Shown piece by piece: positions 1,040 through 63,405 of a DNA stretch of 64,000 nt. How positions within the stretch are numbered: the first letter of the stretch is position 1; each line of letters starts with the position of its first letter. The notes beneath the pieces are model-generated. The model was not told the DNA's origin. It made no database searches and saw only the letters and a list, made by a program, of their open reading frames with translations. The position numbers and the translations under genes are program-made. The stretch spans positions 124,001 through 188,000 of the IMG/VR virus record IMGVR_UViG_3300036715_000626, one strand, 5' to 3'.

Positions 1040-1073
1040 TAACTACTACCTAGGTAATCCTAGGTAGTAGTTA
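1040..1073. terminator. Palindromic hairpin (15-bp stem, 4-nt loop)
   Basis: TAACTACTACCTAGG-TAAT-CCTAGGTAGTAGTTA between convergent genes. Confidence 0.75.
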
Positions 1074-1214
1074 CTTAATGAAACTGTGTATGCTGTGTAT
1101 AAAACTAGCAGCATAGTATGTACCTGTCGCTAAAGTCGCGACTCCTAATACTGTGGCTAGAATTTCTTCTAGAACAGTATTCCAATTCCCGGTAACGATA
1201 TTTTTAACATTCAT
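1071..1214 (-). CDS. 47-aa small hydrophobic protein (not in ORF track)
   Basis: Manual translation MNVKNIVTGNWNTVLEEILATVLGVATLATGTYYAASFIHSIHSFIK; AGGAG SD 7 nt upstream; TATATTAT motif at 1248-1255. Confidence 0.65.
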   Translation of the reverse strand: MNVKNIVTGNWNTVLEEILATVLGVATLATGTYYAASFIHSIHSFIK

Positions 1215-1247
1215 AATAGACTCCTCGGTCTGGTATTAATTAACTAT

Positions 1248-1255
1248 ATAATATA
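1248..1255 (-). promoter_or_regulatory. Putative early (vRNAP) promoter TATATTAT
   Basis: About 34 nt upstream of ATG 1214; recurring motif resembling the phiKZ early consensus TATATTAC. Confidence 0.55.
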
Positions 1256-1311
1256 GCTTTATATTTTAATGGAAATGATGTTACACTATGGACGCATATG
1301 CATCCATAGTG

Positions 1312-2190
1312 TTATTTATCGGCTAACTTCTCTACGAGAGTAATAGAATGTTTAAACGTATCTAAACACTGATTGTATACATAGATCATTGTGATAGCAC
1401 TTGTGATTGCTTTAGCGGAGTTCTCTAGCATACCACCAAGATGTTCTAACACGTTACGAGAAATATTCATATCTTTATTATCATTAAGATACTTGTAAAG
1501 AGTGTTAACTCGTTCTGAAATAACTTTGGAAAGAGTTTTAATCTCTTCCATGCGTTTAAGCGTCGCGGTACCGTTTAGTTTAATAATAGTGTCATAACAC
1601 GTATCATAACTATTGATAGACGGAATAACGTTACCTAAGTTAGCTCTATCCTTAACACCGTTCTCATCGATGATTTCTGCGATAAGACCATATAATTTTG
1701 AAGAGATTTCAAAATCGTTTTTATCGCGGAATGGTTTAGTTTGTGTACGGAAATCTTTATTAGTAAGAACTTTTGAAACAGTATCGTCAGTTTCTTTAAG
1801 TATAGCGATAAGTTCCTTATCGATAATATCAAATCCACGCGATACACGATCAAGACTGTCCGGTAATGAAAGTTTCATACCTAACAAGACAGGTACTTGT
1901 ATTTTTTCAACATCAACAAGTTTAACGTTTTGTTTAATCTTATCAATACTCTGACGCATATCAAAGAGTTCTTTACCGCTGCGAGTAAGTTGTTGATCGT
2001 TCATACCCATAAGACGATTGATGGAGTTTACAAATGTTTCAGAGATAGCTTTGAGTTGTGATGTAAAGAACGAAGCAATCTGTGAAATGAATACTCCAAA
2101 TTCCTCGTTACTAGGGTTATATTTAGCCCGTTCGTACATATTAGGAATACCTAAAAGTGCTTGAGTGTTAACTAATTTTAAATTTTCCAT
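1312..2190 (-). CDS. Probable virion head protein (phiKZ gp153-like position)
   Basis: Helical 292-aa protein divergent from uvsX as in phiKZ; S-N-E motif (PSNEEF) resembles a prohead-protease site. Synteny from memory. Confidence 0.45.
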   Translation of the reverse strand: MENLKLVNTQALLGIPNMYERAKYNPSNEEFGVFISQIASFFTSQLKAISETFVNSINRLMGMNDQQLTRSGKELFDMRQSIDKIKQNVKLVDVEKIQVPVLLGMKLSLPDSLDRVSRGFDIIDKELIAILKETDDTVSKVLTNKDFRTQTKPFRDKNDFEISSKLYGLIAEIIDENGVKDRANLGNVIPSINSYDTCYDTIIKLNGTATLKRMEEIKTLSKVISERVNTLYKYLNDNKDMNISRNVLEHLGGMLENSAKAITSAITMIYVYNQCLDTFKHSITLVEKLADK

Positions 2191-4409: not shown

Positions 4410-5231
4410 ATGATTAGTGATACTCTAGATAAAAGACAAGCTGTGCTTGGTAAGAGCTTATTCGATAAGACAGTCACAAAGATTACTGTCAATATCAATA
4501 TTGTAAGTACATTACCACTGATGATAATGGAAGATGCTTTGTTAGATCGTAATGTTATCGATCTAACACCTATTCCTGCTGTTTCTGATTTACCATCGGT
4601 TAAGAATATTCTTATGGATCCTACCTATACAGAAAACGATATAGCGGTAGATCGTTTTATTCATATTACAACGGTTACTAACCCGCATACCTATTTTAAA
4701 TACGGATTGTGGTACGATAAACAATTTAAAGATATCATTGTGCTTCCAGGTACCGAGACTATCATATTTGACGATGATACGTTATCAAGTAGCGTTCTTG
4801 GAATAACAGGGTATCGCGTTGGTAGCGGTCTCGCAGTACCTGTTATTCCGGATGAAATGGTCATCGGTATGAATCTACAGCATAAATATGATTTACCAGT
4901 CGCTAAACAGAACATTGCTTCCACTATGTGGTTGGGCGATTTCCACGGACTGAACCCTATTCATAATCTTATCAATAACTTTAGCTATAGTGAAGTTTTT
5001 CAAGAAAAAAATGGTAAACAATTCAATATTGGTTTTTTAAGAGCTCGCTCTGAACCAGTTATTATGTTGGATCTTGGTCTAGCCGATAACTTATTCGAGA
5101 ATTTTGATAACGCTGTTAACAAATTACCACTCTATATGGTTTACCAACAAGGCATAACTCGCTATTCGTTTTCATACCTGGGTAATGTTAAACCAAAAAA
5201 TTATCGTGTTTGTATTTGTTTACAATTTTAG
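4410..5231 (+). CDS. Hypothetical protein
   Basis: 273-aa ORF with AAGGA SD; no family recognised. Confidence 0.7.
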   Translation: MISDTLDKRQAVLGKSLFDKTVTKITVNINIVSTLPLMIMEDALLDRNVIDLTPIPAVSDLPSVKNILMDPTYTENDIAVDRFIHITTVTNPHTYFKYGLWYDKQFKDIIVLPGTETIIFDDDTLSSSVLGITGYRVGSGLAVPVIPDEMVIGMNLQHKYDLPVAKQNIASTMWLGDFHGLNPIHNLINNFSYSEVFQEKNGKQFNIGFLRARSEPVIMLDLGLADNLFENFDNAVNKLPLYMVYQQGITRYSFSYLGNVKPKNYRVCICLQF

Positions 5232-5270
5232 TAACGTTGGTTGTACCAACGTTACAGGGAGATTTTGACT

Positions 5271-5939
5271 ATGAAAAATAGAAAAAAAGCAGAAGAGTTT
5301 ATCTTATCATATATCGATAAAATAGATCTTGGTGAAAAACGTAATACTAAACTTTACAAAGATTTGTTTAAAGGTATGTCTGATAATGAATTTGAAAACT
5401 TCATGTCCGGATTGCGTAATAAGACAATCACTTTAAGTATGATAGTACCTAACGGTGGTGATGTTAAAATCACTGTGGAAAATAATTTTAAGATAGCTAA
5501 AGAATTAGGACATGAGTTCTTTCAGAATATTCGCATTACTGGCCAAGTAGATTTACCTGATTTCATAACCCCTATTAAACATCTTACCTACATTCTTCCT
5601 ATTAGAAGAGCAGCGCAGTTACTCAGTAAGAAGATATCTATACCAGAGTCTGATAAATCAATTGATATGTTAACAGGTCAAGTTACTAATAAGTCTAAGT
5701 CTAGCAAGATAACTATGCCCGAGATACAAATGTTGATTGGTATGGGACTTAAAGATAGTGTGCGTGAGTTACTTAAAATTCGCGGCGGTGATATTCAAGC
5801 CAATAACGCTATGAATATGATGTTGTATAAACAAGGCTCGGCCTCACAAGCAGCTATTGAACCATACAGTTCAGGTGTGGAAAGTACGAAAACATTAAAG
5901 GCTTATCTTAACGCAAGCCATATTAAATCAACATTATAA
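5271..5939 (+). CDS. Virion RNA polymerase beta-subunit C-terminal fragment (phiKZ gp149-like)
   Basis: Motifs LPIRRAAQLLSKKISIP, IDMLTGQV, KITMPE and ELLKIRGGD; the likely start is ATG 5271 behind GGGAG rather than TTG 5241. Confidence 0.8.
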   Translation: MKNRKKAEEFILSYIDKIDLGEKRNTKLYKDLFKGMSDNEFENFMSGLRNKTITLSMIVPNGGDVKITVENNFKIAKELGHEFFQNIRITGQVDLPDFITPIKHLTYILPIRRAAQLLSKKISIPESDKSIDMLTGQVTNKSKSSKITMPEIQMLIGMGLKDSVRELLKIRGGDIQANNAMNMMLYKQGSASQAAIEPYSSGVESTKTLKAYLNASHIKSTL

Positions 5940-5974
5940 AGTAACACTACTACCCACTGGGTAGTAGTGTTACT
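5940..5974. terminator. Palindromic hairpin (17-bp arms, 1-nt spacer)
   Basis: AGTAACACTACTACCCA-C-TGGGTAGTAGTGTTACT between convergent genes. Confidence 0.75.
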
Positions 5975-5979: not shown

Positions 5980-8205
5980 TTACACTGTATACTTACTAAT
6001 GTAAGGACCTTTCTGATATATAGCTAATGCTTCTTGTGGTGTTGGAAATGATGCATAATATTCAATACTATTTATTCCAACATTAGCAGCGTAATCAGGA
6101 CTAAACGCGACAAAACCGCCTGCTTGTATAGCGTTAGGTGATGCGTATGACGCAGATCCTAATAACAAAGTAACTGTTCCTAATAACACACCGTTAAGGT
6201 AACAAGTCGCGATATTATTAGTTTTATCTATTACGATAATAATGTTTAAAAAATTAGATATTTCGGTATTACCATACCCTGGTAACATATAATCTCTAAG
6301 ATCTAAAGTATTATCAAATTCAGTACTAACGTTAGCTATGGTTACTCGTCCAGTTGCAGTAGTATTTATACTTAAAAACCATGAATACTCACTACTGCCA
6401 GCAGTATTAAGTGCGTAATATTCGCCTACGATAAAATGATATTTTCCGGGAGTTAGATCTGTTAAACAAACCCACGTGCTAAGTGTATAGGTATCACTTT
6501 TATTATGTCCCGTAAAATCCATTCTTGGTAAAAAATATTGATTATACCCATTTATCACACCATATTTAGCATTTTGCAAATATGTATACGTAGGCGCTGT
6601 TGTTGCCAGGGTGGAATAACTACTCTCTAATATATCCTTATAATATGTGTTATCGTTAGTAATATTTTTAAACGTAGAATCCAGTAATAAACCTTGAGAT
6701 GCTTCATTCGGAGCACCGGTCACTGGGTCTATACCGCCAATAATATAACAAAAACCTAAATTACTATGTATTTGGTTAAAACTCCTCACAGCTATACCAG
6801 CATATTTTATTTTATGTACTTTATAACTAATATCGATAGGTGTTTCTCTAGAAGTACCAGTTAACATTCCAGAAGGATCTATTTCAAAAAATTCAATAGG
6901 TAGTAACGTATTGTTAAGCCCGCCTCCTATGATGGCTACCATATCACCAGTAGCAACTAGACCAGCTCCTTCACGGATATGGTTAGTAAACACACCTGAA
7001 TCTACAAAATCACTAGGTATACCATTTACTACGTTTGATACTAGTATTTTAATAGTAGGCGTATCGTTTATAATAGGATTAAACAAATACACATACCCGG
7101 TACCACTATATGCTTCAAGTTTATTGGTGGTAACTAATACCCTACCATCGCGATATGTAGTTTGTGCTGGGTACGCCGAAGTACTATGACTTGTAAAATC
7201 GCCTAGCACACCATTGTTATCAATAGGTGCTTTATACGCTAATCCAATATCCGAAATAACGTATATATGATTACCGACTGTAAAGGTAGTCGGGCGGTTC
7301 GTTAATCCAGATACTAGTTGTGTATCAGACATAGATAACTGCGGAGCTAATACGGTATCTTGTGTCCAACCAATTAAACTAGAATTAGTTACATCGATGT
7401 CGGTAAAATAAAGATTTGTGGTTTGACTTGAAATTCTCCAAGCACTAAGCCCAGAATCGTAAACTATAGTTATTCCTATTATATAGATACGATTCCTTGT
7501 TTCAAATACTGAAATAGGCATAACCATATCCCCACCATCTCTAGGTAAAAGACTATATGGAGTTAATGTAAAACTTTGATAGTCCGAAAGATCAAATATA
7601 CCAGGAGACGCTAATATTTCGGACGGGGTTCCGTCCGCTAGAAATCCACCTATACAATAATAGCGATCTTTAGTTCGTACTATAAAAGGATATTTAATAC
7701 CCATTTCTTGCCCTGTATATTGATACAAATCATTATTAACGGTATCGGGTACCCTAATTAAGTCATCTTTATCTGAAAATGATGGGGTTGATGGGTCAGT
7801 TAAATATTTATTTTGGTTATTAAGTTCAGTTAGATAATCTAAAGTTGGAGGTACTGTTGTGTCAAGTGGTTTATGTAAAGGAAACCCATCATATCCTTTA
7901 TGGACATTAGTTAAATTAGGATTAATGTAATCGTATAGTTCGTTGAAATATTGTCCAGTGTCACCTATGTTTGGATCATATGTATATGTTAAATACCGGA
8001 TCATAAGTTCAAAAGCTGCAGGTATAGTTCCGCCACCACCTGAACCACCACCACCTGAACCACCACCACCTGAACCACCACCACCTGAACCACCACCACC
8101 ACCATTGTTAATAGGGGGTACATAACTCGGGGCCTTCTTACTACATGGTCGATTTTTAGTATCGTAACTGTTAATATTCATGGTATATCCTTTAGAGTTT
8201 ATCAT
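5980..8205 (-). CDS. Tail/baseplate-associated adhesin-like protein: (GGGGS)n linker, kelch-like repeats, C-terminal LamG-like domain
   Basis: Repeated Y/C-I-I-G-G strands; C-terminal TLSTWV...IIIVID...CYLNG...SIEYY pattern is typical of Laminin_G_3 domains. Confidence 0.6.
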   Translation of the reverse strand: MINSKGYTMNINSYDTKNRPCSKKAPSYVPPINNGGGGGSGGGGSGGGGSGGGGSGGGGTIPAAFELMIRYLTYTYDPNIGDTGQYFNELYDYINPNLTNVHKGYDGFPLHKPLDTTVPPTLDYLTELNNQNKYLTDPSTPSFSDKDDLIRVPDTVNNDLYQYTGQEMGIKYPFIVRTKDRYYCIGGFLADGTPSEILASPGIFDLSDYQSFTLTPYSLLPRDGGDMVMPISVFETRNRIYIIGITIVYDSGLSAWRISSQTTNLYFTDIDVTNSSLIGWTQDTVLAPQLSMSDTQLVSGLTNRPTTFTVGNHIYVISDIGLAYKAPIDNNGVLGDFTSHSTSAYPAQTTYRDGRVLVTTNKLEAYSGTGYVYLFNPIINDTPTIKILVSNVVNGIPSDFVDSGVFTNHIREGAGLVATGDMVAIIGGGLNNTLLPIEFFEIDPSGMLTGTSRETPIDISYKVHKIKYAGIAVRSFNQIHSNLGFCYIIGGIDPVTGAPNEASQGLLLDSTFKNITNDNTYYKDILESSYSTLATTAPTYTYLQNAKYGVINGYNQYFLPRMDFTGHNKSDTYTLSTWVCLTDLTPGKYHFIVGEYYALNTAGSSEYSWFLSINTTATGRVTIANVSTEFDNTLDLRDYMLPGYGNTEISNFLNIIIVIDKTNNIATCYLNGVLLGTVTLLLGSASYASPNAIQAGGFVAFSPDYAANVGINSIEYYASFPTPQEALAIYQKGPYISKYTV
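8041..8100 (+). repeat. Four perfect 15-bp tandem repeats TGAACCACCACCACC encoding GGGGS on the minus strand
   Basis: Read directly from the sequence, with partial copies on both sides. Confidence 0.95.
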
Positions 8206-8211: not shown

Positions 8212-8243
8212 TACGACAGTATGGCTCGAGCCATACTGTCGTA
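8212..8243. terminator. Perfect 32-bp palindrome
   Basis: TACGACAGTATGGCTCGAGCCATACTGTCGTA. Confidence 0.7.
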
Positions 8244-8246: not shown

Positions 8247-10397
8247 TTATAACACAATTGTATTTAAATCGCGAAGTACCTCGATAGTAAATACCGGTAA
8301 CATCTCTTCTACTTTTAAATCGGTAGATTGGTTAATTATTTCCATGTATCCAGAAACAGTATTTTCCATAGATGACATGAATGGTAGGTTGTTAGTATAA
8401 TAATTAGCTAGACTAAAGTCATAATTATTAGCTTCTAAATTTATCTTAGTATACTCAGGTTCTAAAGGATCTATTATAGAGGCTCCTGTAGTGGTTACAA
8501 GCCCTTTAGTGTTCTTAATGACAGATATACTTGTATATGGTACAAAAGTTGTTTTAGAGTTCTCTACGGCGTTCACAGCATGTACAGTATATGATGTTAA
8601 CTTCGTTATAATGTCAATATAGTTTTGGTTATTAGTTTCTATAGTATCATATGCATCAATGTTGATACCTGTCACAATTATAAACAAATCTTTAATAGCT
8701 AAAGAGATATCAAAATATTCAGTATCTTTTAATACGATACCATGTTTAGAAAGCACCGCATCTATAGTGGTAGGAGCCCCATTATTCTCAAAATTAATAA
8801 CATGTGTTTCAAATACTCTTGAAGCTGCTATCTTAATATTACTAGAGTTAAGAGCGTTCTCAGAATTTACATCAGTTATCCATACAAACTTATATAAGTT
8901 AGTGATATCATCAATGTGTGTTTTGAAAGTATCTTTATTATATAGCATACTATTATGTCTAACAGGAACCATATCGATAATATCAAAAGCTCTGTCTAGT
9001 ACATCATGTCCGTTAAACAGATTCGATACTAAATCAGGACCCGATAAAACAGTAGGATCTTTTAATATCTTACACGAAATATTAGTCAACATGCTAGATT
9101 CATTATTAGTAAGTTTTAGTAAAAACTTTAATAATAAATAGTATGCTTCTAATGGAGTAATGTTATAGCTAACTTTAGTATTAGGTTCAAGGTAGGTAAC
9201 CTTTTCCGTAAAACTGTTGTTATGTGCTAGGTATATCCAATTATCCATAATAGTTAAAATAATATCATCGCCGTAGAGTTTAAATAACTGCGGTATGTTA
9301 ATATCAATAACTTTAGTTTTTTGTTTAAACAACAAAGATTTATTAAGAGTATTATCAGCATAACGCGCTATGTTACTCAACTCATCAGGTGTTACTGGAA
9401 CATCTATGTTGTGAGCAGCCATCTCTAAATTAACAATAGTATAAATATCTAACTCACTATTAATATCAAATTGATAGGAGTTGTTTTTACCTTGACCGAT
9501 AAACAATGCACCGGTATCACTATACAATGAACTACTAGTATCTAGTATATCAGAATTGAGGCTAGGATCCTTCTTAAAAAGGATATGTTCTCCAACACCA
9601 ATTCCGTTAGCATCAAATACATTTAACAATAATGATTTAAACGCTTCTGTGCTACCGGTATGTTTCATTAAGTAGCGTAAGTTTTTATATAACCAAAACT
9701 TAGTAGATTCTTTAAAGCTAGCAATATTATCCCATAGATCCAAGTGACTTCTAAAGAAGTGTTCCATATGGAATGGGTGTACTTCTGCAGTGTTGATCTT
9801 ATGTAGACGAAGGTTAGCTATCTTATTAGGTATTGCCGCAAACAACACAGCCAATAAACTAGCTGCGTATAGTTCATCTGTTAAAACATAGTCTATGATA
9901 TCCCAACGTTTTAAATAGTTCTTAATATAAAGTTCTAGTTCTCTAATTAACGAGAACTCGTTCTTAAATACTAAATCACTATTATAGTTTAGAATTTTAC
10001 CTTCAGCAGCGTTAATCGCTACAGTCATATCTACCGGTAACATACATCCATTTATATAACTAAAGTCGTTAGGGTATAAACTAATAAGTTCTTTATAGTA
10101 ATTACCATATTTAAGAAGTTCTTTTCTGGTGTATGGATACTGGTCTAGAATCGTTTTAGTTAATAATACTTTAGTAGTATTTTCAATCAGGGTTATGTAT
10201 ATTTCACTACTATTAGTATGATGTTTTTGACCTGAGATATTAAGATAATATTTCCAAGTAGTTTTATCAGAAGAAATAGTTAAATCGTAGAGTCTTTCTA
10301 GACCAAAATTAATAGCTACTGCTGTGGTACTGTTTTTTATAACCAAGCTATTAGTGAGTAAGTGTATGTCATTCTTATATTGATCTACAGTATACAT
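8247..10397 (-). CDS. Virion structural protein (phiKZ gp128-like)
   Basis: 716 aa; TWKYYLNISG and FWLYKNLRYLMKHTG motifs; adjacent to the portal as in phiKZ-like phages. Confidence 0.65.
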   Translation of the reverse strand: MYTVDQYKNDIHLLTNSLVIKNSTTAVAINFGLERLYDLTISSDKTTWKYYLNISGQKHHTNSSEIYITLIENTTKVLLTKTILDQYPYTRKELLKYGNYYKELISLYPNDFSYINGCMLPVDMTVAINAAEGKILNYNSDLVFKNEFSLIRELELYIKNYLKRWDIIDYVLTDELYAASLLAVLFAAIPNKIANLRLHKINTAEVHPFHMEHFFRSHLDLWDNIASFKESTKFWLYKNLRYLMKHTGSTEAFKSLLLNVFDANGIGVGEHILFKKDPSLNSDILDTSSSLYSDTGALFIGQGKNNSYQFDINSELDIYTIVNLEMAAHNIDVPVTPDELSNIARYADNTLNKSLLFKQKTKVIDINIPQLFKLYGDDIILTIMDNWIYLAHNNSFTEKVTYLEPNTKVSYNITPLEAYYLLLKFLLKLTNNESSMLTNISCKILKDPTVLSGPDLVSNLFNGHDVLDRAFDIIDMVPVRHNSMLYNKDTFKTHIDDITNLYKFVWITDVNSENALNSSNIKIAASRVFETHVINFENNGAPTTIDAVLSKHGIVLKDTEYFDISLAIKDLFIIVTGINIDAYDTIETNNQNYIDIITKLTSYTVHAVNAVENSKTTFVPYTSISVIKNTKGLVTTTGASIIDPLEPEYTKINLEANNYDFSLANYYTNNLPFMSSMENTVSGYMEIINQSTDLKVEEMLPVFTIEVLRDLNTIVL

Positions 10398-13077: not shown

Positions 13078-13105
13078 ACACTAACTGGGAATTCCCAGTT
13101 AGTGT
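13078..13105. terminator. Perfect 28-bp palindrome
   Basis: ACACTAACTGGGAATTCCCAGTTAGTGT between convergent genes; A-run on the left. Confidence 0.75.
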
Positions 13106-14623: not shown

Positions 14624-14656
14624 AGTAACACACAGGACTATATCCTGTGTGTTACT
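14624..14656. terminator. Hairpin (14-bp stem, 5-nt loop)
   Basis: AGTAACACACAGGA-CTATA-TCCTGTGTGTTACT. Confidence 0.7.
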
Positions 14657-18458: not shown

Positions 18459-18489
18459 GATACACTACAGCGGTATGCTGTAGTGTATC
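18459..18489. terminator. Hairpin after the major capsid gene (13-bp stem)
   Basis: GATACACTACAGC-GGTAT-GCTGTAGTGTATC. Confidence 0.7.
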
Positions 18490-23103: not shown

Positions 23104-23132
23104 ACACTAGACAGTCATTGACTGTCTAGTGT
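23104..23132. terminator. Palindrome (14-bp arms, 1-nt spacer)
   Basis: ACACTAGACAGTCA-T-TGACTGTCTAGTGT between convergent genes. Confidence 0.75.
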
Positions 23133-24351: not shown

Positions 24352-24873
24352 ATGCCATACGTAAACTTACGTTTGTCTACTAATTTTACATTAGACGAAC
24401 TTACTGATTCTGCTAACCATCCCGATCTTGTACCTGGTAACAGAGCAGAAATTGCTTCTAAACCAGAGCTAATTAAAAACATAACTGATCTAGCAGTACA
24501 TGTATTACAACCACTTCATGATGCGTTATCAAAACATTTTGGTAAAACGGTATCGGTGTTCGTATCGTCTGGATACCGTGGAACCGTTTTAAATGTAAAA
24601 GTAGGTGGAAGTCCTACTGGAGCACACCCGCGTGGTCACGGAGCTGATATTAATGTACATGAGTTTAGTGTCGATGATTTGTTTCAGTTTATTAAAGATA
24701 ACTTGAATATCTTTAATGGTTGGTTAGATAAATGTATCATCGAGAAAGTTGGTGATAAAGAATGGATACATATTTCTGCAGATATTCCAGAGAATGCTCG
24801 ATGTGAGTTCTATACCACTAATGATGGTAAGAAATATGACCTAGTGTATAAAGGTCTTGTCGCTAAGAAATAA
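24352..24873 (+). CDS. Peptidase M15 family peptidoglycan peptidase
   Basis: SSGYR..LN..VGGS..GAH...HGADI and WIHIS give the His-Asp-His zinc ligands. Confidence 0.9.
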   Translation: MPYVNLRLSTNFTLDELTDSANHPDLVPGNRAEIASKPELIKNITDLAVHVLQPLHDALSKHFGKTVSVFVSSGYRGTVLNVKVGGSPTGAHPRGHGADINVHEFSVDDLFQFIKDNLNIFNGWLDKCIIEKVGDKEWIHISADIPENARCEFYTTNDGKKYDLVYKGLVAKK

Positions 24874-24904
24874 GATACAGTACTCCATATGGAGTACTGT
24901 ATCT
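24873..24904. terminator. Perfect 32-bp palindrome
   Basis: AGATACAGTACTCCATATGGAGTACTGTATCT between convergent genes. Confidence 0.75.
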
Positions 24905-25945: not shown

Positions 25946-25977
25946 TAAGTAACGTAGTCAAATGACTACGTTACTTA
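25946..25977. terminator. Palindrome (15-bp arms, 2-nt spacer)
   Basis: TAAGTAACGTAGTCA-AA-TGACTACGTTACTTA after the tail-fibre operon. Confidence 0.7.
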
Positions 25978-35777: not shown

Positions 35778-35806
35778 AGACTACAGAGCTTATAGCTCTG
35801 TAGTCT
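35778..35806. terminator. Hairpin (13-bp stem, 3-nt loop)
   Basis: AGACTACAGAGCT-TAT-AGCTCTGTAGTCT. Confidence 0.7.
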
Positions 35807-36799: not shown

Positions 36800-36833
36800 C
36801 TAACACACATATCATACATGATATGTGTGTTAG
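36800..36833. terminator. Palindrome (16-bp arms, 2-nt spacer)
   Basis: CTAACACACATATCAT-AC-ATGATATGTGTGTTAG. Confidence 0.7.
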
Positions 36834-43929: not shown

Positions 43930-43959
43930 GTACATAGCTAACAACTGTTAGCTATGTAC
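43930..43959. terminator. Palindrome (14-bp arms, 2-nt spacer)
   Basis: GTACATAGCTAACA-AC-TGTTAGCTATGTAC between convergent genes. Confidence 0.75.
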
Positions 43960-44613: not shown

Positions 44614-45108
44614 ATGAATATGACATACCAAGAATGGGTAACAGATCACAATGAAAAGGTGTCTAAAATATTAAATAAATTATCTTTACAAGGAATATCT
44701 ACTATTGAAGAAATAGTAGATTACTTTGATTTTGATAGTATGGCTAAAAATGAACCTGAGTTTTGTCCACTTTATAAGGATAATATCAAATGCCACAGTA
44801 TAGAAAAACTTAATTGTTATCACTGTGCGTGTCCTCACTTTGTTATTAACAAGAATCCTGCTACTAAAGGTAAGACTACCATAGCCAGTGTATGTAGTAT
44901 TGATTCTCGCTTTAAAGATGAGTTCTACGAAAATCCAGATGAGAATAATGTAGTTAAAATACATTGTGATTGTACTAACTGCTACTTACCGCATAAGCAG
45001 TCTTATGTTTTAAAATCATTACATAACCAACAAAAAGACTATATTAAATTAAAAGAGTGTGATTCATTATTAGATTACTTACGTGTAAATCAAATGAAGA
45101 AAAAATAA
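44614..45108 (+). CDS. Cysteine-rich small-domain (zf-like) protein
   Basis: FCPLY...CH....LNCYHCACPHF...CS...HCDCTNCYLPH pattern. Confidence 0.75.
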   Translation: MNMTYQEWVTDHNEKVSKILNKLSLQGISTIEEIVDYFDFDSMAKNEPEFCPLYKDNIKCHSIEKLNCYHCACPHFVINKNPATKGKTTIASVCSIDSRFKDEFYENPDENNVVKIHCDCTNCYLPHKQSYVLKSLHNQQKDYIKLKECDSLLDYLRVNQMKKK

Positions 45109-45139
45109 GACTACATACCGCATCTGCGGTATGTAGTCT
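45108..45139. terminator. Palindrome (15-bp arms, 2-nt spacer)
   Basis: AGACTACATACCGCA-TC-TGCGGTATGTAGTCT between convergent genes. Confidence 0.75.
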
Positions 45140-45805: not shown

Positions 45806-45833
45806 CTGTATATAGGGATATCCCTATATACAG
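45806..45833. terminator. Perfect 28-bp palindrome
   Basis: CTGTATATAGGGATATCCCTATATACAG. Confidence 0.7.
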
Positions 45834-47170: not shown

Positions 47171-47199
47171 GTAAGTAGGAAGCAATGCTTCCTACTTAC
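47171..47199. terminator. Palindrome (14-bp arms, 1-nt spacer) overlapping the topA stop
   Basis: GTAAGTAGGAAGCA-A-TGCTTCCTACTTAC. Confidence 0.7.
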
Positions 47200-49928: not shown

Positions 49929-49952
49929 CACACTAGCTTAAAAGCTAGTGTG
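49929..49952. terminator. Palindrome (11-bp arms, 2-nt spacer)
   Basis: CACACTAGCTT-AA-AAGCTAGTGTG. Confidence 0.65.
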
Positions 49953-51222: not shown

Positions 51223-51261
51223 GAACTATAAAATATTGGAACTAACATAAAAAAAGAACTA

Positions 51262-51289
51262 CTACACTAACCCAATTGGGTTAGTGTAG
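51262..51289. terminator. Perfect 28-bp palindrome
   Basis: CTACACTAACCCAATTGGGTTAGTGTAG. Confidence 0.7.
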
Positions 51290-51433
51290 GTAATTACAAT
51301 GTGCGAGTGAATCTATAAGCTGCTCTTGTATGTCTTGGTCTACTAGAGACCGATACTTATCAGAAGCATACTTTTTATATAACTCGAGATCTGTAGATAC
51401 GTATTGATTTGGTACTTTTACATTGTTATCCAT
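51281..51433 (-). CDS. 50-aa hypothetical protein (not in ORF track)
   Basis: Manual translation MDNNVKVPNQYVSTDLELYKKYASDKYRSLVDQDIQEQLIDSLAHCNYLH; starts 2 nt after the upstream stop. Confidence 0.55.
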   Translation of the reverse strand: MDNNVKVPNQYVSTDLELYKKYASDKYRSLVDQDIQEQLIDSLAHCNYLH

Positions 51434-53425: not shown

Positions 53426-53437
53426 TTTATTCCTTTG

Positions 53438-54436: not shown

Positions 54437-54476
54437 GTTATCTCCTAGTGCTTCTATTTAATAGAGGTCTCTATAA

Positions 54477-54484
54477 ATAATATA
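54477..54484 (-). promoter_or_regulatory. Putative early promoter TATATTAT
   Basis: About 41 nt upstream of the AAA ATPase gene. Confidence 0.55.
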
Positions 54485-54519
54485 TGGTTGTCTCTTTTTA
54501 AATATATGTTTGAAATAAA

Positions 54520-54723
54520 ATGATTACAGGAACTACTATGCCACAGACCACTACACAAAAACAATTTAACCAAGCTATACAAGAAATATTAAGAAATATT
54601 GATTTAAATCAAGGAGATATGGGAGAGGATGGCTGTTTAACAGACCAGTTCTATGACAGAGATGACATTTCTGCTGAAAAGAAAAAGATTCTTAAAAATC
54701 TAACTACTATGCTGAAAGGTTGA
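54520..54723 (+). CDS. Small hypothetical protein
   Basis: Probable start MPQTT behind AGGA; overlaps the next gene. Confidence 0.55.
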   Translation: MITGTTMPQTTTQKQFNQAIQEILRNIDLNQGDMGEDGCLTDQFYDRDDISAEKKKILKNLTTMLKG

Positions 54724-55797: not shown

Positions 55798-55823
55798 CTA
55801 CATACCGGATATCCGGTATGTAG
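55798..55823. terminator. Perfect 26-bp palindrome
   Basis: CTACATACCGGATATCCGGTATGTAG between convergent genes. Confidence 0.75.
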
Positions 55824-55827: not shown

Positions 55828-56271
55828 TTAATATTTTTCATCAAAGTTTTGACCTTTAATGGTAATGCGTTCCGCTTTATCCATATTAGCCAAAGCTAAT
55901 GATATCTTAGCATTAGAACGTACTAAGCGGACTTCTTGCTCAAGAGACTTAACCGTGTCTCTTAGTGAACTAATACTATCTTCAAGACCCCATACCTCTT
56001 TAAAGAACATTTTAAGTTCACGTGCTTCTACTAAAACATCTCCGGTTAAACCGGAGTTAATTAACTCTACTGGAGTAATGTATTTATTATTACCCCTAGA
56101 ATTTCTATTACCGAGTTCACTCACAACAATAGTAGCTTTAGTAGCTACTTTATTGTTAGCATCTTCGATCATCTTTATGAGCATTTGTACCTCGCCTGCT
56201 GTGATGTCAATCCGTTTATCCGGGTTCATCAACTTAATCTCACCTAGTGACACTGGTCTGCTTTTAAACAT
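55828..56271 (-). CDS. Hypothetical protein
   Basis: 147 aa; GAGG SD; TATATTAT upstream. Confidence 0.65.
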   Translation of the reverse strand: MFKSRPVSLGEIKLMNPDKRIDITAGEVQMLIKMIEDANNKVATKATIVVSELGNRNSRGNNKYITPVELINSGLTGDVLVEARELKMFFKEVWGLEDSISSLRDTVKSLEQEVRLVRSNAKISLALANMDKAERITIKGQNFDEKY

Positions 56272-56330: not shown

Positions 56331-56356
56331 CTACATACCACATATGTGGTATATAG
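56331..56356. terminator. 26-bp palindrome with one mismatch
   Basis: CTACATACCACATATGTGGTATATAG. Confidence 0.65.
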
Positions 56357-56358: not shown

Positions 56359-57252
56359 CTAATAGGTACTAAATTGAATTGCTTTAAATACATTGTCTAA
56401 ATTTGTTTTAACTAACATAATATAGATCATGTTACTAGCAAATATATTTGCCGTAACTATAGGCTTAATACGGCGGGATACTGTATCAAAATCAGTATCG
56501 TATACATCAATATAAAATATCTGTGTAGCAGAATCGTTATGTATTTGATATATAATAACAGATAAACTACTTACGCCTATATTATACATAAAATCAAGTG
56601 TGTAGTTTTTATTAACCACGATATCATTCAACGGTGACACAATACTCGCGTTGATATCTCCGGAAGTAATAAATGTCATAGTGGCGACTTGAGAACTATC
56701 ATTACTACTACTATTAAAAATAGCTCTAGCGCGATATGCATTGTTTTCTTTAAGAATAACATCACAAATCAGCATATTGTTTAAATTAATACTATCTGCG
56801 ATATGTTCCCATACGACTACACCAAAGATATCTTCAATAATCCATGTAGTAGATTCGTGTGTTCCAGTGCCGTACGAGCTATACCCATGCACACTTAAAG
56901 TGAACATCGTTGTAAGGTGATTAGTGGCGTCTGATGAAGATGTCAATATAGGTGTAGAAAGCACGCTAGGCATCTCAGAACGTAGATCAAGATCTCCTAG
57001 ATAGTTTGGAGTGGTAACATCAATATTACCCCACACCGTGTATCCTGTAGTAAGTAAAGACCGTGCTCTCGCGTAATAGCGTGATGTCGGATCAAGAGCA
57101 TCGTTAAACATAATACTAGATAGGTTAACATTATCCCCCATAGAACTAATAATAACATTAGTAAATTGTAAGTCGGTAGCTACCTGCCAATCTGTAGCAA
57201 GATGAGTTACTCCTGGTGGTAACAATAGTTCTGTAATTTTTAAAACAACCAT
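56359..57252 (-). CDS. Virion structural protein with two FN3/Ig-like repeats
   Basis: HLATDWQV...YYARAR and HESTTWII...YRARA duplicated modules. Confidence 0.6.
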   Translation of the reverse strand: MVVLKITELLLPPGVTHLATDWQVATDLQFTNVIISSMGDNVNLSSIMFNDALDPTSRYYARARSLLTTGYTVWGNIDVTTPNYLGDLDLRSEMPSVLSTPILTSSSDATNHLTTMFTLSVHGYSSYGTGTHESTTWIIEDIFGVVVWEHIADSINLNNMLICDVILKENNAYRARAIFNSSSNDSSQVATMTFITSGDINASIVSPLNDIVVNKNYTLDFMYNIGVSSLSVIIYQIHNDSATQIFYIDVYDTDFDTVSRRIKPIVTANIFASNMIYIMLVKTNLDNVFKAIQFSTY

Positions 57253-60042: not shown

Positions 60043-62886
60043 TTAGAACCAGAGCATAGTACGGTATAACTCGGCTCCGCTATTACGCATGTGATAAAGG
60101 TAATTTATACCAGAATCACTTTTTACAATTTCCATACGGTTACCAATAGCCGGAGCTAACTGTGTATTAGGTACAGCACCCGCTCCAAATATTCTACCAA
60201 GTGTTATATCATAATAGTATACATACTGCACAACTCCAGAAGCAACAGCTGGTGAAAAATATATACGGTTAACTCCGTCATATGCATAATAAGTACCAGC
60301 CCCCATAGTATCTGTTTGAGGAGTAAAGAATAACGAATACTCAAATAGTTCCGTTGTAATGTCATAACGATCAGCTGTATTAGATCCTCCGCCGCGCGGT
60401 AAAAACATATATTTACCATTAGATACTCCACCAAACATCCATAGTAATTCAATACCCACACCTCTATTAGGTACACTTAGTATAGTATAGGTCGTAGTTG
60501 CATCAGGAGCAAAACCTGTAATCGCTGTGAATGTCAATGTATTCGAAGTGTTCGAAACAATTGTTATTTCATTAAGCGCCGCTGCTAAACCGAACCCACT
60601 ACCACCAGTGATACGGACTTTCTTACCTGCCCATTGATTAACAACCCAGTTTTGGGTGGTATCTACTAGTGTAGATGCAGAACCAGCCCCAGTGCAAACA
60701 CCAAAACTATCCTGAATAATATATCTAGTAGTCGAATCTGGCGTAAACGACTGTGTTGCATACGTTAATGTATTGTTAGTATTACTAGTAATAGTTATAT
60801 AGGTATCTCTACCGGTACCTGCTAATATTCTAAACCGATAACCAGCCCACTGATTAGTGTTCCAATTTTTAGTAGTATCTACTAATGTGGTCGTAGAACC
60901 ACCTGTAGCTAACCCATATGAACTTTTTGTAAGATCCTTATATTGCTCATCTCTACCAAACATACTATTATTAACAATAACATATCGACCGGTACCGTTT
61001 ACAAGTGCGGTTGTGATAGTAGCTACCGTTAAGGTAGTCGCTGTGTTAGAAGTAATTATACGTGGTTGAACTGCTCCAGATGTACCTACTAAATGGGTCT
61101 GAACTATTTTACCAACATGTTCGTTAACGGTCCAGTTTTTAGTAGAATCTACTATAACGGTAGCTGATAATGCATTAGCCGCGGTCATGTTACCAGATGC
61201 TGCCGTAGCAAAATCGAAACCAGTTAATGAATCACACCCTATAATGGTAACAGTACCTGCGTACGAGGAATCTCCCGAAAGAACTACTGAATCGCCTATT
61301 TTAAAGTTATGGTTAATAGCGGTCACTACGTTACACACAACACCTACTACAGTTACGTTAGCTACAAATCCAGTTCCGACACCAGTTGTCGCAGATTGCG
61401 CGAAAGTAGTTACAGAATAACCACTACCTGGACGGTACAGCGATATACCAGTTACTACACCACCAGCACTAACTGAAGTTACTTGCACCTTACCACTAGT
61501 TCCGGTCACAAGAGTGATTATTTCACCGACGACATACCCAGTACCCGCTGCAGATATAGTTACTGTTTTAATACCAGATGTTGTTCTTGTACCTGAAGTT
61601 AGAGCTATTGTAGGGGTATCCAAACCAGGAAAGTTAGCGCCTAAAATACACGCCACCCCGTCATCATATTTACTACCTTCTATCACTAAGTCTGAATCTA
61701 CATCATATTGTAACATAGCCGCTTGAGCATTACCTGTAATATAAAATTTATCTTTATCTGCTATAATTTCATATACTGATGTATTATCAGGTGTAATAGT
61801 CCATTTTCTAGCAACTTCTACGTAATTTGTTCCGGTACTAATTATTCGTCTTTGTTGCCCCACACCAGTACCAGAAGTAATACGTACTCTATAATTATTA
61901 TATTGATTTACTGTATATGCTTTAGCCGTGTTGACTAATGTATAGACGGTACCGGAAGTAGCTGTTCCGGTATCATATATTCCCCCAATCTCACTAGTAC
62001 GTTCAAGTGTTCCGTCCGTACCAAATGCAGCCAGTGTTATATTGGTAGGTACTGTTTTATATTGCCATGTATCCATAGCAGTATCATAATACTGTAATGA
62101 AAAAAACGGAGCTGCTACAGAAGATGTTAACAACCAACAACCACCCGACTCTACTTTATAGGTAGATGTGTAATCTGGTTGTACAGTCCATGGTGTATCG
62201 ACAGTTACGTCTGAAGCTTCAATAACAAAGTGGGATTGTGAACCGGCTGTTGTAGACGGAGTAGTAACAAAACTGACATTATTAAACGGATATAGCGGTT
62301 GGTAGTTAGCATCTGCAACATACAATGTTGTATTATCATTATACAAAATCTTACGTATTTGTGTCATACCAGTACTAAAGGTAATTCGTACTTGATAACC
62401 GCACCATTGATTCATTTTCCATTTTTTAGTAGAATCACCGATACTTGTAGCTGATGCAACAGTAGCTACTCCTTGATCATACTTTGTAGGAATCCCTGTC
62501 GTAGTTATTGTTCTAGTTTGTCCGCTACCAGTACCAGAAGTAATACGTATTTTAAATCCATCTAAAATATTTGCATTAAATCCAGCTATTCGTATTTGAT
62601 TAGCGGCAGGAGTACTGATAACACGCCCGTATGTTCCACTGAACGCAGAATATCTTAAAGATGCAAATACTGTAGGGGAAAGCAAAAGAGGAGCAAGTTT
62701 ATGCGGGACATTACCATAGGTATCGTATTTATAAAATGACGCTCCGGACACATAATAAATTCCCCTTCCCTTCCCGTCTTCTTGTGTAGTTAATGCGGAC
62801 AACGCACTTGAAGCTACTGGTAGCGGTTCCATAGATTGCCAAAGTTGTTTATTGTCGATTGTGTGGTTATTATTCGTAGTGGCCAT
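60043..62886 (-). CDS. Large tail-associated repeat protein
   Basis: About six copies of a D.TKNW..NQW.G..VRI..GTG.G..R.I.SN...TL module between propeller-like terminal segments. Confidence 0.7.
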   Translation of the reverse strand: MATTNNNHTIDNKQLWQSMEPLPVASSALSALTTQEDGKGRGIYYVSGASFYKYDTYGNVPHKLAPLLLSPTVFASLRYSAFSGTYGRVISTPAANQIRIAGFNANILDGFKIRITSGTGSGQTRTITTTGIPTKYDQGVATVASATSIGDSTKKWKMNQWCGYQVRITFSTGMTQIRKILYNDNTTLYVADANYQPLYPFNNVSFVTTPSTTAGSQSHFVIEASDVTVDTPWTVQPDYTSTYKVESGGCWLLTSSVAAPFFSLQYYDTAMDTWQYKTVPTNITLAAFGTDGTLERTSEIGGIYDTGTATSGTVYTLVNTAKAYTVNQYNNYRVRITSGTGVGQQRRIISTGTNYVEVARKWTITPDNTSVYEIIADKDKFYITGNAQAAMLQYDVDSDLVIEGSKYDDGVACILGANFPGLDTPTIALTSGTRTTSGIKTVTISAAGTGYVVGEIITLVTGTSGKVQVTSVSAGGVVTGISLYRPGSGYSVTTFAQSATTGVGTGFVANVTVVGVVCNVVTAINHNFKIGDSVVLSGDSSYAGTVTIIGCDSLTGFDFATAASGNMTAANALSATVIVDSTKNWTVNEHVGKIVQTHLVGTSGAVQPRIITSNTATTLTVATITTALVNGTGRYVIVNNSMFGRDEQYKDLTKSSYGLATGGSTTTLVDTTKNWNTNQWAGYRFRILAGTGRDTYITITSNTNNTLTYATQSFTPDSTTRYIIQDSFGVCTGAGSASTLVDTTQNWVVNQWAGKKVRITGGSGFGLAAALNEITIVSNTSNTLTFTAITGFAPDATTTYTILSVPNRGVGIELLWMFGGVSNGKYMFLPRGGGSNTADRYDITTELFEYSLFFTPQTDTMGAGTYYAYDGVNRIYFSPAVASGVVQYVYYYDITLGRIFGAGAVPNTQLAPAIGNRMEIVKSDSGINYLYHMRNSGAELYRTMLWF

Positions 62887-62895
62887 ATTGATCCT

Positions 62896-63345
62896 TTATA
62901 CGTATTGTATGTTATTTAATATTCCAGTATTAAAAGCTGTATCCATCTGAGCTTCTACCACACGTTGCGCTTGTACATCCCCTATTCGAGCTTGATTGGA
63001 TAAAGTACCTACAGTTGTAGTAGTAGCAACTGTTGTTACTGTTGTTACGGTCCCAACTGTTCCTAGTCCTCCGGATTTAGCTAAATTTACATATAACTGT
63101 TTAGCTGGATCGGTAATCATGCCAAATTCTAATCGATCTAGAAAATATGCCATAATGTTGTATATGTCAGTCATAGTTTTATCGTTGGTAGGCATCGGGT
63201 TATCAGTAGAAACTAATCCACCATCTACAGAACTTCCACCTAATTGCAATTTAACTATTTGTGTTTCAGTATTGTCAGTTAGCTTATCCGTGTTAACACT
63301 ATGTAGTGTACTATTAGTGTCGCTAAGCACTACTTCAGTTTGCAT
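62896..63345 (-). CDS. Tail-associated protein with TVT repeats
   Basis: GTVGTVTTVTTVATTTTVGT segment; AAGGAG SD. Confidence 0.6.
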   Translation of the reverse strand: MQTEVVLSDTNSTLHSVNTDKLTDNTETQIVKLQLGGSSVDGGLVSTDNPMPTNDKTMTDIYNIMAYFLDRLEFGMITDPAKQLYVNLAKSGGLGTVGTVTTVTTVATTTTVGTLSNQARIGDVQAQRVVEAQMDTAFNTGILNNIQYV

Positions 63346-63378
63346 GTTGTCTCCTTGTATGTGATAAAAAAATACTAC

Positions 63379-63405
63379 GTTCTAGAGGATATAATCCTCT
63401 AGAAC
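63379..63405. terminator. Hairpin (12-bp stem, 3-nt loop)
   Basis: GTTCTAGAGGAT-ATA-ATCCTCTAGAAC. Confidence 0.7.

What the first reader, a model, noticed from the sequence alone, without database searches (positions are those of the whole stretch)
1040..63405. Family of 20 near-perfect intergenic palindromes with shared arm motifs and consistent polarity
Seen: 20 inverted repeats with 11-17 bp arms and 0-5 nt spacers; seven have no spacer. Arms share (A)CTAC/ACACTA starts, and three share CTACATACC. About half have an A6-8 run 5-12 nt to the left, giving minus-strand hairpin-TCTTAT-like spacer-T-run. Minus-strand stop codons often lie inside the arm (1071, 36830, 43952, 47192, 51281). This departs from canonical intrinsic terminators, which have a short GC stem, a real loop and an abutting U-tract. 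Inference: phage-RNAP-specific terminators, or protein-bound cruciform or RNA-processing sites.
Basis: partly seen in the sequence, partly recalled or inferred. Interest (0 to 1): 0.6.

Follow-up and report, generated by a model that had tools for sequence, protein, structure and literature searches.

The report
Palindromic transcription terminators of a jumbo phage
The palindromes are real and are most likely the hairpin transcription terminators, many working in both directions, of an uncultivated phiKZ-like giant phage; this is an ordinary function, but the hairpin loops flip orientation between near-identical strains.

Summary
Observation confirmed. The window has 21 perfect inverted repeats (arms 11 bp or more, spacer 8 nt or less) against 0.4 expected. 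The whole 205-kb genome has 66, of which 64 are intergenic. The genome is a phiKZ-like jumbo phage from a microbial mat, with phiKZ-type capsid and split RNA polymerase genes.

The palindromes start -13 to +25 nt from stop codons. They occupy 23 of 29 convergent gene junctions but only 2 of 28 divergent ones. A T6-8 run follows on the transcribed side (17/39 against 1/39 on the other side). With the flanks folded in, a lower stem usually brings the U-run next to the hairpin.

Relatives with 44-55% capsid identity carry perfect palindromes at the same junctions with unrelated sequence. Between 94-99% identical strains the arms are about ten times more conserved than the background.

Best reading: intrinsic-type, often bidirectional terminators. 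They are the low-GC, long-stem counterpart of the mapped hairpin+TTAT terminators of phiKZ and 201phi2-1. No RNA data exist, so 3' ends are inferred.

Extra finding: 7 of 12 asymmetric loops are exactly reverse-complemented between strains. This is a template-switch signature and would explain why the arms stay perfect.

The parts
1040..1073 (.). Palindrome with 15-bp arms and a 4-nt spacer at a convergent junction; T7 run on the minus side; the minus-strand stop codon at 1071 lies in the arm.
   Evidence: z -5.5. Identical in strain contig L016.
1283..1312 (-). 14-pair palindrome with no spacer and one U.G wobble on the sense (minus) strand, directly after gene 1312-2190(-).
5231..5255 (+). 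Weak member: 11-bp arms and a 3-nt spacer between + genes 4410-5231 and 5241-5939; no T-run.
   Evidence: Spacer reverse-complemented in L016.
5940..5974 (.). 17-bp arms, 1-nt spacer, convergent junction 5241-5939(+) / 5980-8205(-); no T-run on either side.
   Evidence: Central base is complemented in L016.
8212..8243 (-). 16-bp arms, no spacer, 4 nt after the stop of 8247-10397(-); no T-run.
   Evidence: The orthologous junction in L007 has an unrelated perfect palindrome.
13078..13105 (.). 14-bp arms, no spacer (AAUU loop), convergent junction 10421-13063(+) / 13105-14529(-); lower stem, then T7 on the minus side.
   Evidence: z -6.4. The orthologous junction in L007 has an unrelated palindrome.
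14624..14656 (-). 14-bp arms, 5-nt spacer, 11 nt after the stop of 14667-15137(-); T6 run 15 nt downstream; early-promoter-like motif at about 14587.
   Evidence: Identical in L017.
18459..18489 (-). 13-bp arms, 5-nt spacer, 13 nt after the stop of the major capsid gene 18502-20658(-); no T-run; early-promoter-like motif at about 18417.
   Evidence: z -5.8. Spacer exactly reverse-complemented in strain contig L005. A hairpin is present after the capsid gene in L007, L008, L010, L011 and phiKZ.
23104..23132 (.). 14-bp arms, 1-nt spacer, convergent junction; T8 on the minus side.
   Evidence: z -6.4. Unchanged in L005.
24873..24904 (.). 16-bp arms, no spacer (AUAU loop), convergent junction 24352-24873(+) / 24906-25352(-); T5 on the plus side.
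   Evidence: Identical in L018.
25946..25977 (-). 15-bp arms, 2-nt spacer, 20 nt upstream of the start of 25354-25926(-); follows a small ORF called in strain L018; no T-run.
   Evidence: Spacer reverse-complemented in L018.
35778..35806 (-). 13-bp arms, 3-nt spacer, 11 nt after the stop of 35817-36389(-); followed by TTA and T7.
   Evidence: z -7.0.
36800..36833 (-). 16-bp arms, 2-nt spacer, overlapping the stop of 36830-37060(-); no T-run.
43930..43959 (.). 14-bp arms, 2-nt spacer, convergent junction between ribonucleotide reductase 41608-43920(+) and 43952-44485(-); T7 on the minus side.
   Evidence: z -6.9. Spacer reverse-complemented in run X1 and in L015.
45108..45139 (.). 15-bp arms, 2-nt spacer, convergent junction 44614-45108(+) / 45138-45767(-); T6 on the minus side, encoded within the final Lys codons of the + gene.
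   Evidence: z -7.1. Spacer reverse-complemented in L015.
45806..45833 (-). 14-bp arms, no spacer (AUAU loop), T7 on the minus side; lies 132 nt below 45966-46226(-) here, but directly after an extra gene in strain L015.
47171..47199 (-). 14-bp arms, 1-nt spacer, overlapping the stop of the topoisomerase gene 47192-49549(-).
   Evidence: Central base is complemented in L015.
49929..49952 (-). 11-bp arms, 2-nt spacer, 17 nt after the stop of 49969-51186(-); followed by TTA and T7 on the minus side.
   Evidence: Identical in L015.
51262..51289 (-). 14-bp arms, no spacer (AAUU loop), T7 on the minus side; part of a 111-nt terminator-promoter cassette duplicated at G000 53325-53434.
   Evidence: z -4.9.
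55798..55823 (.). 13-bp arms, no spacer (AUAU loop), convergent junction 54720-55787(+) / 55828-56271(-); T7 on the minus side and T5 on the plus side.
   Evidence: z -4.8.
56331..56356 (-). 12-pair palindrome with no spacer and one U.G wobble on the sense (minus) strand, 2 nt after the stop of 56359-57252(-); T7 downstream.
63379..63405 (-). 12-bp arms, 3-nt spacer, 24 nt after the stop of 63429-63836(-); T7 downstream.
   Evidence: z -6.0. In strain L020 it carries the only arm substitution seen, which makes a U.G pair on the sense strand.

Best explanation
The palindromes are the phage's factor-independent (intrinsic-type) transcription terminators, that is, hairpins that form transcript 3' ends. 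Transcribed from either strand, each gives the same RNA hairpin. It has a perfect stem of 11-20 bp (mostly 13-16) closed by a 3-4-nt AU-rich loop, and is often lengthened at its base by a short lower stem. Where a single direction dominates, a U6-8 tract follows on that side, often preceded by TTA or TC. At convergent gene pairs one palindrome serves both genes. The hairpin plus U-rich tract would destabilise the elongation complex of the phage's phiKZ-type multisubunit RNA polymerases, and probably of any bacterial-type RNAP. The hairpin that remains would also protect the 3' end. The near-perfect symmetry has two causes. One is a preferred AUAU or AAUU loop, which is self-complementary. The other is replication template switching inside the palindrome, which copies one arm from the other and inverts the spacer. 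Shown here: anatomy, placement, strand polarity, conservation, arm constraint and loop flips. Inferred: that RNA 3' ends form there, and which polymerase responds.
For: Excess over chance: 21 loci in the window against 0.4 in shuffles; 66 genome-wide, 64 of them intergenic. RNA folds have z-scores of -4.8 to -7.1. Placement: the hairpins start -13 to +25 nt from the upstream stop codon. They are present at 23/29 convergent, 28/111 minus-minus, 11/36 plus-plus and 2/28 divergent junctions. Co-directional junctions with a hairpin have a median gap of 83 nt and a promoter-like motif in 31%; those without have 9 nt and 10%. Polarity: a run of T6 or more within 16 nt occurs on the sense side in 17/39 and on the antisense side in 1/39. 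In MFE folds that include the flanks, the stem reaches to within 3 nt of the T-run, or into it, in most cases. A generic terminator scan returns eight of them among its top hits, 21 found against 7.9 +/- 2.6 in shuffles. Conservation: five relatives with 44-55% capsid identity have 3-10 perfect palindromes per 22 kb against 0.3 or fewer expected. These sit at the same junctions (after the capsid gene, and at the convergent pair corresponding to 13078), with unrelated sequences. Strain level: arms show 1/474 changes against 2.3% in coding and other intergenic DNA, P about 2e-4. The one arm change and the rare imperfect pairs are G.U on the sense strand, 5 against 1 A.C. Phage context: phiKZ capsid and homologues of nvRNAP gp55/68/71-73/74/123 and vRNAP gp80. 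Precedent: phiKZ has 133 mapped termination sites, and most of its predicted intrinsic terminators share a hairpin+TTAT motif with a W-rich loop (PMC10914365). 201phi2-1 has the same motif, with elongated stems giving stronger termination (PMC11512511). AR9 RNA-seq shows strong termination at predicted terminators (PMC5312081). TTAT occurs within 16 nt on the sense side in 23/39 cases against 11/39 on the antisense side. Template switching: 7 of 12 asymmetric spacers are exact reverse complements in strains 94-99% identical. This mechanism is known to homogenise arms and invert spacers (PMC8604942, PMC8794818).
Against: No RNA data exist: no public run on record as RNA holds this phage, so no 3' end has been mapped. 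About a third of the palindromes (21/64), including the one after the capsid gene, have no run of 5 or more T on either side. Canonical U-tract-dependent release therefore cannot be the whole story. Perfect Watson-Crick pairing through the loop, and the strong word bias of the arms (ACTAC and similar; AA and TT avoided), go beyond what an RNA hairpin needs. They leave room for a sequence-reading factor or a DNA-level role. Gene calls are my own crude ORF calls, so the junction counts are approximate.
Confidence: 0.75

Rival explanations
1. The hairpins are RNA 3'-end protection or processing structures rather than terminators. Polymerase stops elsewhere or reads through, nucleases trim back to the stable stem, and the stem sets mRNA half-life. 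Long dsRNA stems could also be RNase III-type cleavage sites.
For: A third of the hairpins lack any T-run. The stems are very long and stable, -16 to -30 kcal/mol, more than termination needs. The placement data fit this reading as well as they fit termination.
Against: The strand-specific T6-8 run next to the structure (17/39 against 1/39) is a termination feature and is not needed for protection. Homologous slots in phiKZ and 201phi2-1 behave as terminators, and 201phi2-1 terminators also terminated in reporter assays (PMC10914365, PMC11512511). The two roles are not exclusive.
Confidence: 0.12
2. The palindromes are DNA-level elements: cruciforms or symmetric binding sites for a phage protein (topoisomerase, resolvase, nucleoid or boundary protein). 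The RNA hairpin would be incidental.
For: Pairing is perfect Watson-Crick with almost no G.T. Twenty-two of 64 have no spacer, and AT-rich centres favour extrusion. Spacer flips show that the arms do interact at the DNA level during replication. Arm words are biased. A type IA topoisomerase gene lies in the window.
Against: A sequence-specific binder needs a conserved sequence, yet orthologous sites in relatives share none. The flanking T-run is asymmetric and tracks the direction of transcription. The rare imperfect pairs are G.U on the sense strand rather than random. The elements are nearly absent from divergent junctions. Loop flips are a passive by-product expected of any perfect palindrome.
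Confidence: 0.06
3. The palindromes are a family of selfish or mobile palindromic elements (REP- or MITE-like) that spread through intergenic DNA.
For: There are many copies with shared short words. One terminator-promoter cassette of 111 nt is duplicated at 98% identity.
Against: Apart from that one pair, the copies are not alignable to each other; self-BLAST finds no family. They sit at conserved junctions in distant relatives. No target-site duplications or longer shared ends were seen.
Confidence: 0.03
4. The palindromes are a by-product of base composition or of chance.
For: None beyond the AT-rich genome (35% G+C).
Against: 21 observed against 0.4 expected in shuffles. The same excess is seen in five relatives. 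The arms are ten times more conserved than the background.
Confidence: 0.01

Closest known systems
Conserved-motif intrinsic terminators of phiKZ and 201phi2-1, mapped by ONT-cappable-seq (PMC10914365, PMC11512511)
   Same: The phage type is the same, with a phiKZ capsid and split multisubunit RNAPs. The slots are the same: after the capsid gene and between convergent genes. Both are symmetric hairpins with a W-rich 4-nt loop and a G-poor 5' arm, followed by a TTAT or U-rich tail. Bidirectional cases occur in both. Elongated two-tier stems are reported in 201phi2-1.
   Different: phiKZ stems are 7-9 bp and G+C-rich (CCYCCCC / GGGRRGG), often with a UUCG-like loop and a TTTATG tail. Here the stems are 13-18 bp of mixed composition built from ACTAC, ACAC and ATAC words. 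The loops are mostly AUAU or AAUU, so the DNA is a zero-spacer palindrome, and the tail is TTA plus T7. Arms of 11 bp or more: 18 per 50 kb here against 4 per 50 kb in phiKZ.
Canonical bacterial Rho-independent terminators, including bidirectional ones at convergent genes
   Same: A hairpin directly followed by a U-tract on the transcribed strand, with an A-tract upstream that pairs with it. They sit just after stop codons, and one palindrome serves both strands at convergent junctions. A generic scan detects them.
   Different: The stems here are unusually long, perfect and only moderately G+C-rich, with the G.C pairs concentrated next to the loop rather than at the base. A third have no U-tract. 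The responding polymerase is probably the phage's own.
Extraordinarily long-stem intrinsic terminators that resist antitermination (Miguel-Arribas et al. 2023, as cited in PMC11512511)
   Same: Long perfect stems in an otherwise intrinsic-terminator design.
   Different: Those were described on Gram-positive conjugative plasmids. No antitermination system is known or was tested here.
Template-switch mutation at inverted repeats: arm homogenisation and spacer inversion (PMC8794818, PMC8604942, PMC5941160)
   Same: Exact reverse-complementing of the spacer with the arms untouched, and maintenance of perfect arms.
   Different: Here it is seen at high frequency (7 of 12 informative hairpins) between phage strains only 1-6% apart. 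To my knowledge it has not been reported for phage terminators; I did not find such a report in the two searches I ran.
Bacterial REP/BIME elements and N4 virion-RNAP hairpin promoters
   Same: Intergenic hairpin-forming repeats. N4 shows that a phage RNAP can read a DNA hairpin.
   Different: REP elements share a conserved sequence and are imperfect. N4 hairpins are 5-7 bp with 3-nt loops and lie upstream of early genes. The palindromes here share no alignable sequence and lie at gene 3' ends.

Membership tests
Intrinsic (Rho-independent) terminator | Stable RNA hairpin | tested here: met
   MFE of -16 to -30 kcal/mol and z-scores of -4.8 to -7.1 against dinucleotide shuffles.
Intrinsic (Rho-independent) terminator | U-tract immediately 3' of the stem on the transcribed strand | tested here: inconclusive
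   A run of T6 or more within 16 nt occurs on the sense side in 17/39 and on the antisense side in 1/39. It abuts the MFE stem (gap of 3 nt or less) in most of those. However, 21/64 hairpins have no run of 5 or more T on either side.
Intrinsic (Rho-independent) terminator | Located at the ends of genes or operons, not at divergent promoters | tested here: met
   Hairpins start -13 to +25 nt from stop codons. They occupy 23/29 convergent and 2/28 divergent junctions.
Intrinsic (Rho-independent) terminator | RNA 3' ends form there without a factor | not testable with these tools
   No public run on record as RNA holds this phage.
phiKZ-type terminator motif | Genome encodes phiKZ-type multisubunit vRNAP and nvRNAP | tested here: met
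   tblastn finds homologues of gp55, gp68, gp71/73, gp74, gp123 and gp80. Pfam Rpb2_6 and Rpb1_2 hits. PhiKZ_MCP hit.
phiKZ-type terminator motif | Sequence motif BCCYCCCC-HWWD-GGGRRGG | tested here: not met
   The arms here are ACTAC/ACAC/ATAC-type and 13-18 bp long. The phiKZ hairpins seen are 8-bp and G+C-rich.
phiKZ-type terminator motif | W-rich 4-nt loop and TTAT just after the stem | tested here: inconclusive
   Of the 42 even-length palindromes, 25 have a central tetramer made only of A and T, and ATAT accounts for 11 of the 42. TTAT occurs within 16 nt on the sense side in 23/39 and on the antisense side in 11/39.
REP/BIME-like repeated palindromes | Copies share an alignable conserved sequence | tested here: not met
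   Self-BLAST finds only one duplicated 111-nt cassette. The arms share only 4-5-nt words.
N4-type DNA hairpin promoter | Short hairpin upstream of the genes it drives | tested here: not met
   The hairpins lie at 3' ends. A separate AR9-like early promoter motif lies downstream of several of them.

The most novel reading that the evidence does not exclude
The palindromes may be more than passive hairpins. Their arms carry a lineage-specific word code (ACTAC-type here, AACAC- or AGTAC-type in relatives). That code could be read by the phage's own non-canonical RNAP or by a dedicated termination or hairpin-binding factor, giving U-tract-independent, phage-specific termination. The same sites may also be hot spots of very frequent flip-flop inversion in replicating phage DNA, so that each population carries both loop orientations.
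Probability: 0.2. Interest if true: 0.6.

Novelty: new member of a known kind. Interest (0 to 1): 0.33.

Why it matters
The palindromes give a ready-made map of transcription-unit ends for an uncultivated clade of phiKZ-like jumbo phages. They also extend the experimentally mapped phiKZ and 201phi2-1 terminator design to a long-stem, low-GC form that keeps the same genomic slots. The U-tract-less third of the sites is a concrete test set for how jumbo-phage multisubunit RNAPs terminate, which is still poorly understood. The loop flips, together with arms ten times more conserved than their surroundings, are a clean natural example of template switching maintaining RNA hairpins. Long perfect bidirectional terminators are also useful parts for synthetic biology.

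Tried and rejected
- Megablast of 9 kb against the phage collection found no match.
- A capsid-based search of IMG/VR found no relative. Relatives came instead from the word-index protein search and exact-protein contig look-ups.
- The search for sequencing runs found four DNA runs (two microbial-mat, two sediment metagenomes) and none on record as RNA. Expression and 3' ends could therefore not be tested. Laying the contigs gave only strain variants.
- Rfam at gathering threshold gave 0 matches and ARAGORN gave 0 tRNAs in the window.
- I considered the T7 run as part of the next gene's promoter and rejected this. It keeps a near-fixed distance to the hairpin but a variable distance to the promoter-like motif and start codon. 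It also occurs where only an RBS fits before the next ATG.
- Sigma-70-like promoters are not enriched: 91 found against 95.5 in shuffles.
- tblastn with phiKZ gp54 (chimallin) found no hit at E 1e-3, so I make no claim about a phage nucleus.
- The palindrome at 46109-46131 lies inside an ORF, lacks the family's words and was left out.
- Restriction-site avoidance or use as the cause of central GATATC, GAATTC and CATATG was considered. It was not pursued, because the centres vary and are explained by AU-rich self-complementary loops.

Full report
**What the window is**

The window is bases 124001-188000 of a 205,015-bp virus record with a 127-bp terminal overlap. It is about 35% G+C. Near-identical DNA is held only in microbial-mat and sediment metagenomes.

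It is a phiKZ-like jumbo phage.
- ORF 18502-20658(-) matches Pfam PhiKZ_MCP at E 1.6e-148.
- Other ORFs match jumbo-phage virion protein families.
- The closest cultured relative of one virion protein is Bacillus phage AgentSmith, at 34% identity.
- The genome encodes homologues of the phiKZ non-virion RNAP subunits gp55, gp68, gp71/73, gp74 and gp123. The gp123 homologue is window ORF 15389-17140.
- It also encodes a homologue of the virion RNAP subunit gp80.

Yes. An exact scan finds 21 loci in the window with perfect arms of 11-17 bp and spacers of 0-5 nt, against a mean of 0.4 in 30 second-order Markov shuffles. Two further palindromes have a single wobble.

Genome-wide there are 66 such loci, and 64 of them are outside ORFs. 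RNA folds of ten examples have z-scores of -4.8 to -7.1.

The shared arm words are real.
- In the 64 arms ACTAC occurs 20 times against 1.6 expected from shuffled arms.
- AA and TT steps are strongly avoided (z -9 and -5).
- The 5' arm is A-rich and, in its outer part, G-poor.

**Where the palindromes sit**

- They begin -13 to +25 nt from the stop codon of the upstream gene, and the stop is often inside the 5' arm.
- They occupy 23 of 29 convergent junctions, 28 of 111 minus-minus junctions, 11 of 36 plus-plus junctions and 2 of 28 divergent junctions.
- At least one 'divergent' case, 45806, is an artefact of my ORF choice. In a sister strain that hairpin directly follows an extra gene.
- Co-directional junctions without a hairpin are tight, with a median gap of 9 nt. 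Those with one have a median gap of 83 nt and more often carry a promoter-like motif (31% against 10%).

**Polarity**

The A-run 'to the left' is a T-run on the transcribed strand.
- At co-directional junctions a run of T6 or more lies within 16 nt on the sense side in 17/39 cases and on the antisense side in 1/39.
- Where genes are on the + strand, elsewhere in the genome, the run lies to the right.
- The run is tied to the hairpin and not to the next promoter. Its distance to the hairpin is 2-8 nt, while its distance to the promoter motif or start codon varies widely.
- When the flanks are folded in, the few bases between the perfect stem and the T-run usually pair with the upstream flank as a lower stem. 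The U-run then abuts the structure or is partly drawn into it.
- A generic intrinsic-terminator scan returns eight of the palindromes between 40 and 60 kb among its top hits, 21 found against 7.9 +/- 2.6 in shuffles. Sigma-70-like promoters are not enriched.

One real exception remains: 21 of 64 have no run of 5 or more T on either side, including the hairpin after the capsid gene.

**Conservation**

Five metagenomic relatives with 44-55% capsid identity have 3-10 perfect palindromes per 22 kb, against 0.3 or fewer expected. Many of these have no spacer.

In the closest relative (L007) palindromes sit at the junctions corresponding to window 8212, 13078, 14624, 18459 and 23104, with wholly unrelated sequences. 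A hairpin follows the capsid gene in L007, L008, L010 and L011, and also in phiKZ itself. So place and perfect pairing are conserved, and sequence is not.

Among strain contigs 94-99% identical to the genome:
- The arms show 1 change in 474 nt (0.21%), against 2.3% in both coding and other intergenic DNA (P about 2e-4).
- That one change, and the rare imperfect pairs elsewhere, are G.U on the sense strand (5) rather than A.C (1).

This is the direction expected for selection on the RNA, but the sample is small.

**An unplanned finding: loop flips**

In the same strain comparison the spacers differ at 14 of 35 positions, and every difference is an exact reverse complement of the spacer.
- Flipped (7 hairpins): 5231, 5940, 18459, 25946, 43930, 45108 and 47171.
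- Not flipped (5 hairpins): 1040, 14624, 23104, 49929 and one outside the window.

The arms (11-17 bp) are far shorter than typical assembly k-mers (my own reasoning, not a tool result), so assembly is an unlikely cause. The flipped contigs appear to come from one sample, so the flips are independent per hairpin but not per strain.

Spacer inversion together with arm homogenisation is the known signature of replication template switching at inverted repeats (PMC8604942, PMC8794818, PMC5941160). It offers a simple reason why the arms stay perfectly Watson-Crick.

The flips also show that loop sequence and orientation are functionally neutral, which argues against loop-specific recognition. The zero-spacer look has a second cause. 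The preferred loop is ATAT (11 of the 42 even-length palindromes, against about 3% expected) or AATT, and both are self-complementary.

**Comparison with what is known**

- ONT-cappable-seq mapped 133 termination sites in phiKZ. Most of its predicted intrinsic terminators share a hairpin with a W-rich loop followed by TTAT, and six are bidirectional (PMC10914365).
- 201phi2-1 has the same motif. Stems elongated by a second motif terminate more strongly, and eight tested terminators also work with the host polymerase in vivo (PMC11512511).
- In AR9, RNA-seq shows strong termination at predicted terminators (PMC5312081).
- In phiKZ DNA I see the published form: 8-bp G+C-rich stems, 4-nt loops and a TTTATG tail, including one after the capsid gene. 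There are only 4 palindromes with arms of 11 bp or more per 50 kb, against 18 here.

The present family is therefore the same functional element in the same slots, in a long-stem, mixed-composition style. TTAT is enriched on the sense side (23/39 against 11/39). Membership in the phiKZ sequence motif itself fails, because the arms differ.

**Verdict**

These are most likely intrinsic-type, frequently bidirectional terminators or 3'-end hairpins (confidence about 0.75). The mechanism is inferred from anatomy and homologous systems, because no RNA data exist.

- Rivals are 3'-end protection or processing without termination (about 0.12), DNA-level cruciform or binding sites (about 0.06) and mobile palindromic elements (about 0.03).
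- 'Phage-RNAP-specific' remains untested.
- Open points are how the U-less third of the sites terminate, why the arm words are so biased, and how fast the loops flip.

Noticed in passing
window 5231, 5940, 18459, 25946, 43930, 45108, 47171 (compared with L005, L015, L016, L018 and run X1): The central spacer of these palindromes is exactly reverse-complemented in 94-99% identical strain contigs while the arms are unchanged. Spacers differ at 14 of 35 positions, arms at 1 of 474. This is the signature of template-switch inversion.
   Followed up: yes
window about 14587, 18417, 40995, 44526, 54485; G000 11637, 62818, 66825, 88812, 110632, 204752: A recurring motif AACCATATATTATTWATRTAG lies 35-115 nt upstream of start codons, often just after a hairpin. 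Its core matches the AR9 early (virion RNAP) promoter consensus AAATATATATTAT-N6-G (PMC5312081). A second motif, CTATATTATAA, recurs at window 1256, 51223 and 56312.
   Followed up: partly
window 51193-51303 and G000 53325-53434: A 111-nt cassette (hairpin, T-run, promoter-like motif, RBS) is duplicated at 98% identity in front of two different genes.
   Followed up: partly
window 44500-47200, compared with L015 and run X1: This is a strain-variable island. L015 has two extra genes where the window has 132 nt (near 45834-45965). L015 lacks most of gene 46220-47128, with a breakpoint 7 nt from the base of hairpin 47171. One low-depth X1 contig joins 45021 to 46824.
   Followed up: partly
window 45088-45108; also G000 7061-7071: At convergent junctions the A-run that templates the minus-strand U-tract can lie inside the last Lys codons of the + strand gene (C-termini ...MKKK* and ...QKK*). 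The terminator tail is thus written into coding sequence.
   Followed up: partly
G000 54350-55004 (outside the window): A roughly 650-bp array of about 30-nt tandem repeats lies inside a gene (self-BLAST).
   Followed up: no
window 47192-49549: A full-length bacterial-type type IA DNA topoisomerase gene (Toprim, Topoisom_bac and C-terminal repeats) is encoded by the phage, and its stop codon lies inside a palindrome.
   Followed up: no
L011 12169-12504: In one relative, three hairpins stand in tandem after the capsid gene: one imperfect, and two perfect with 18-bp arms.
   Followed up: no
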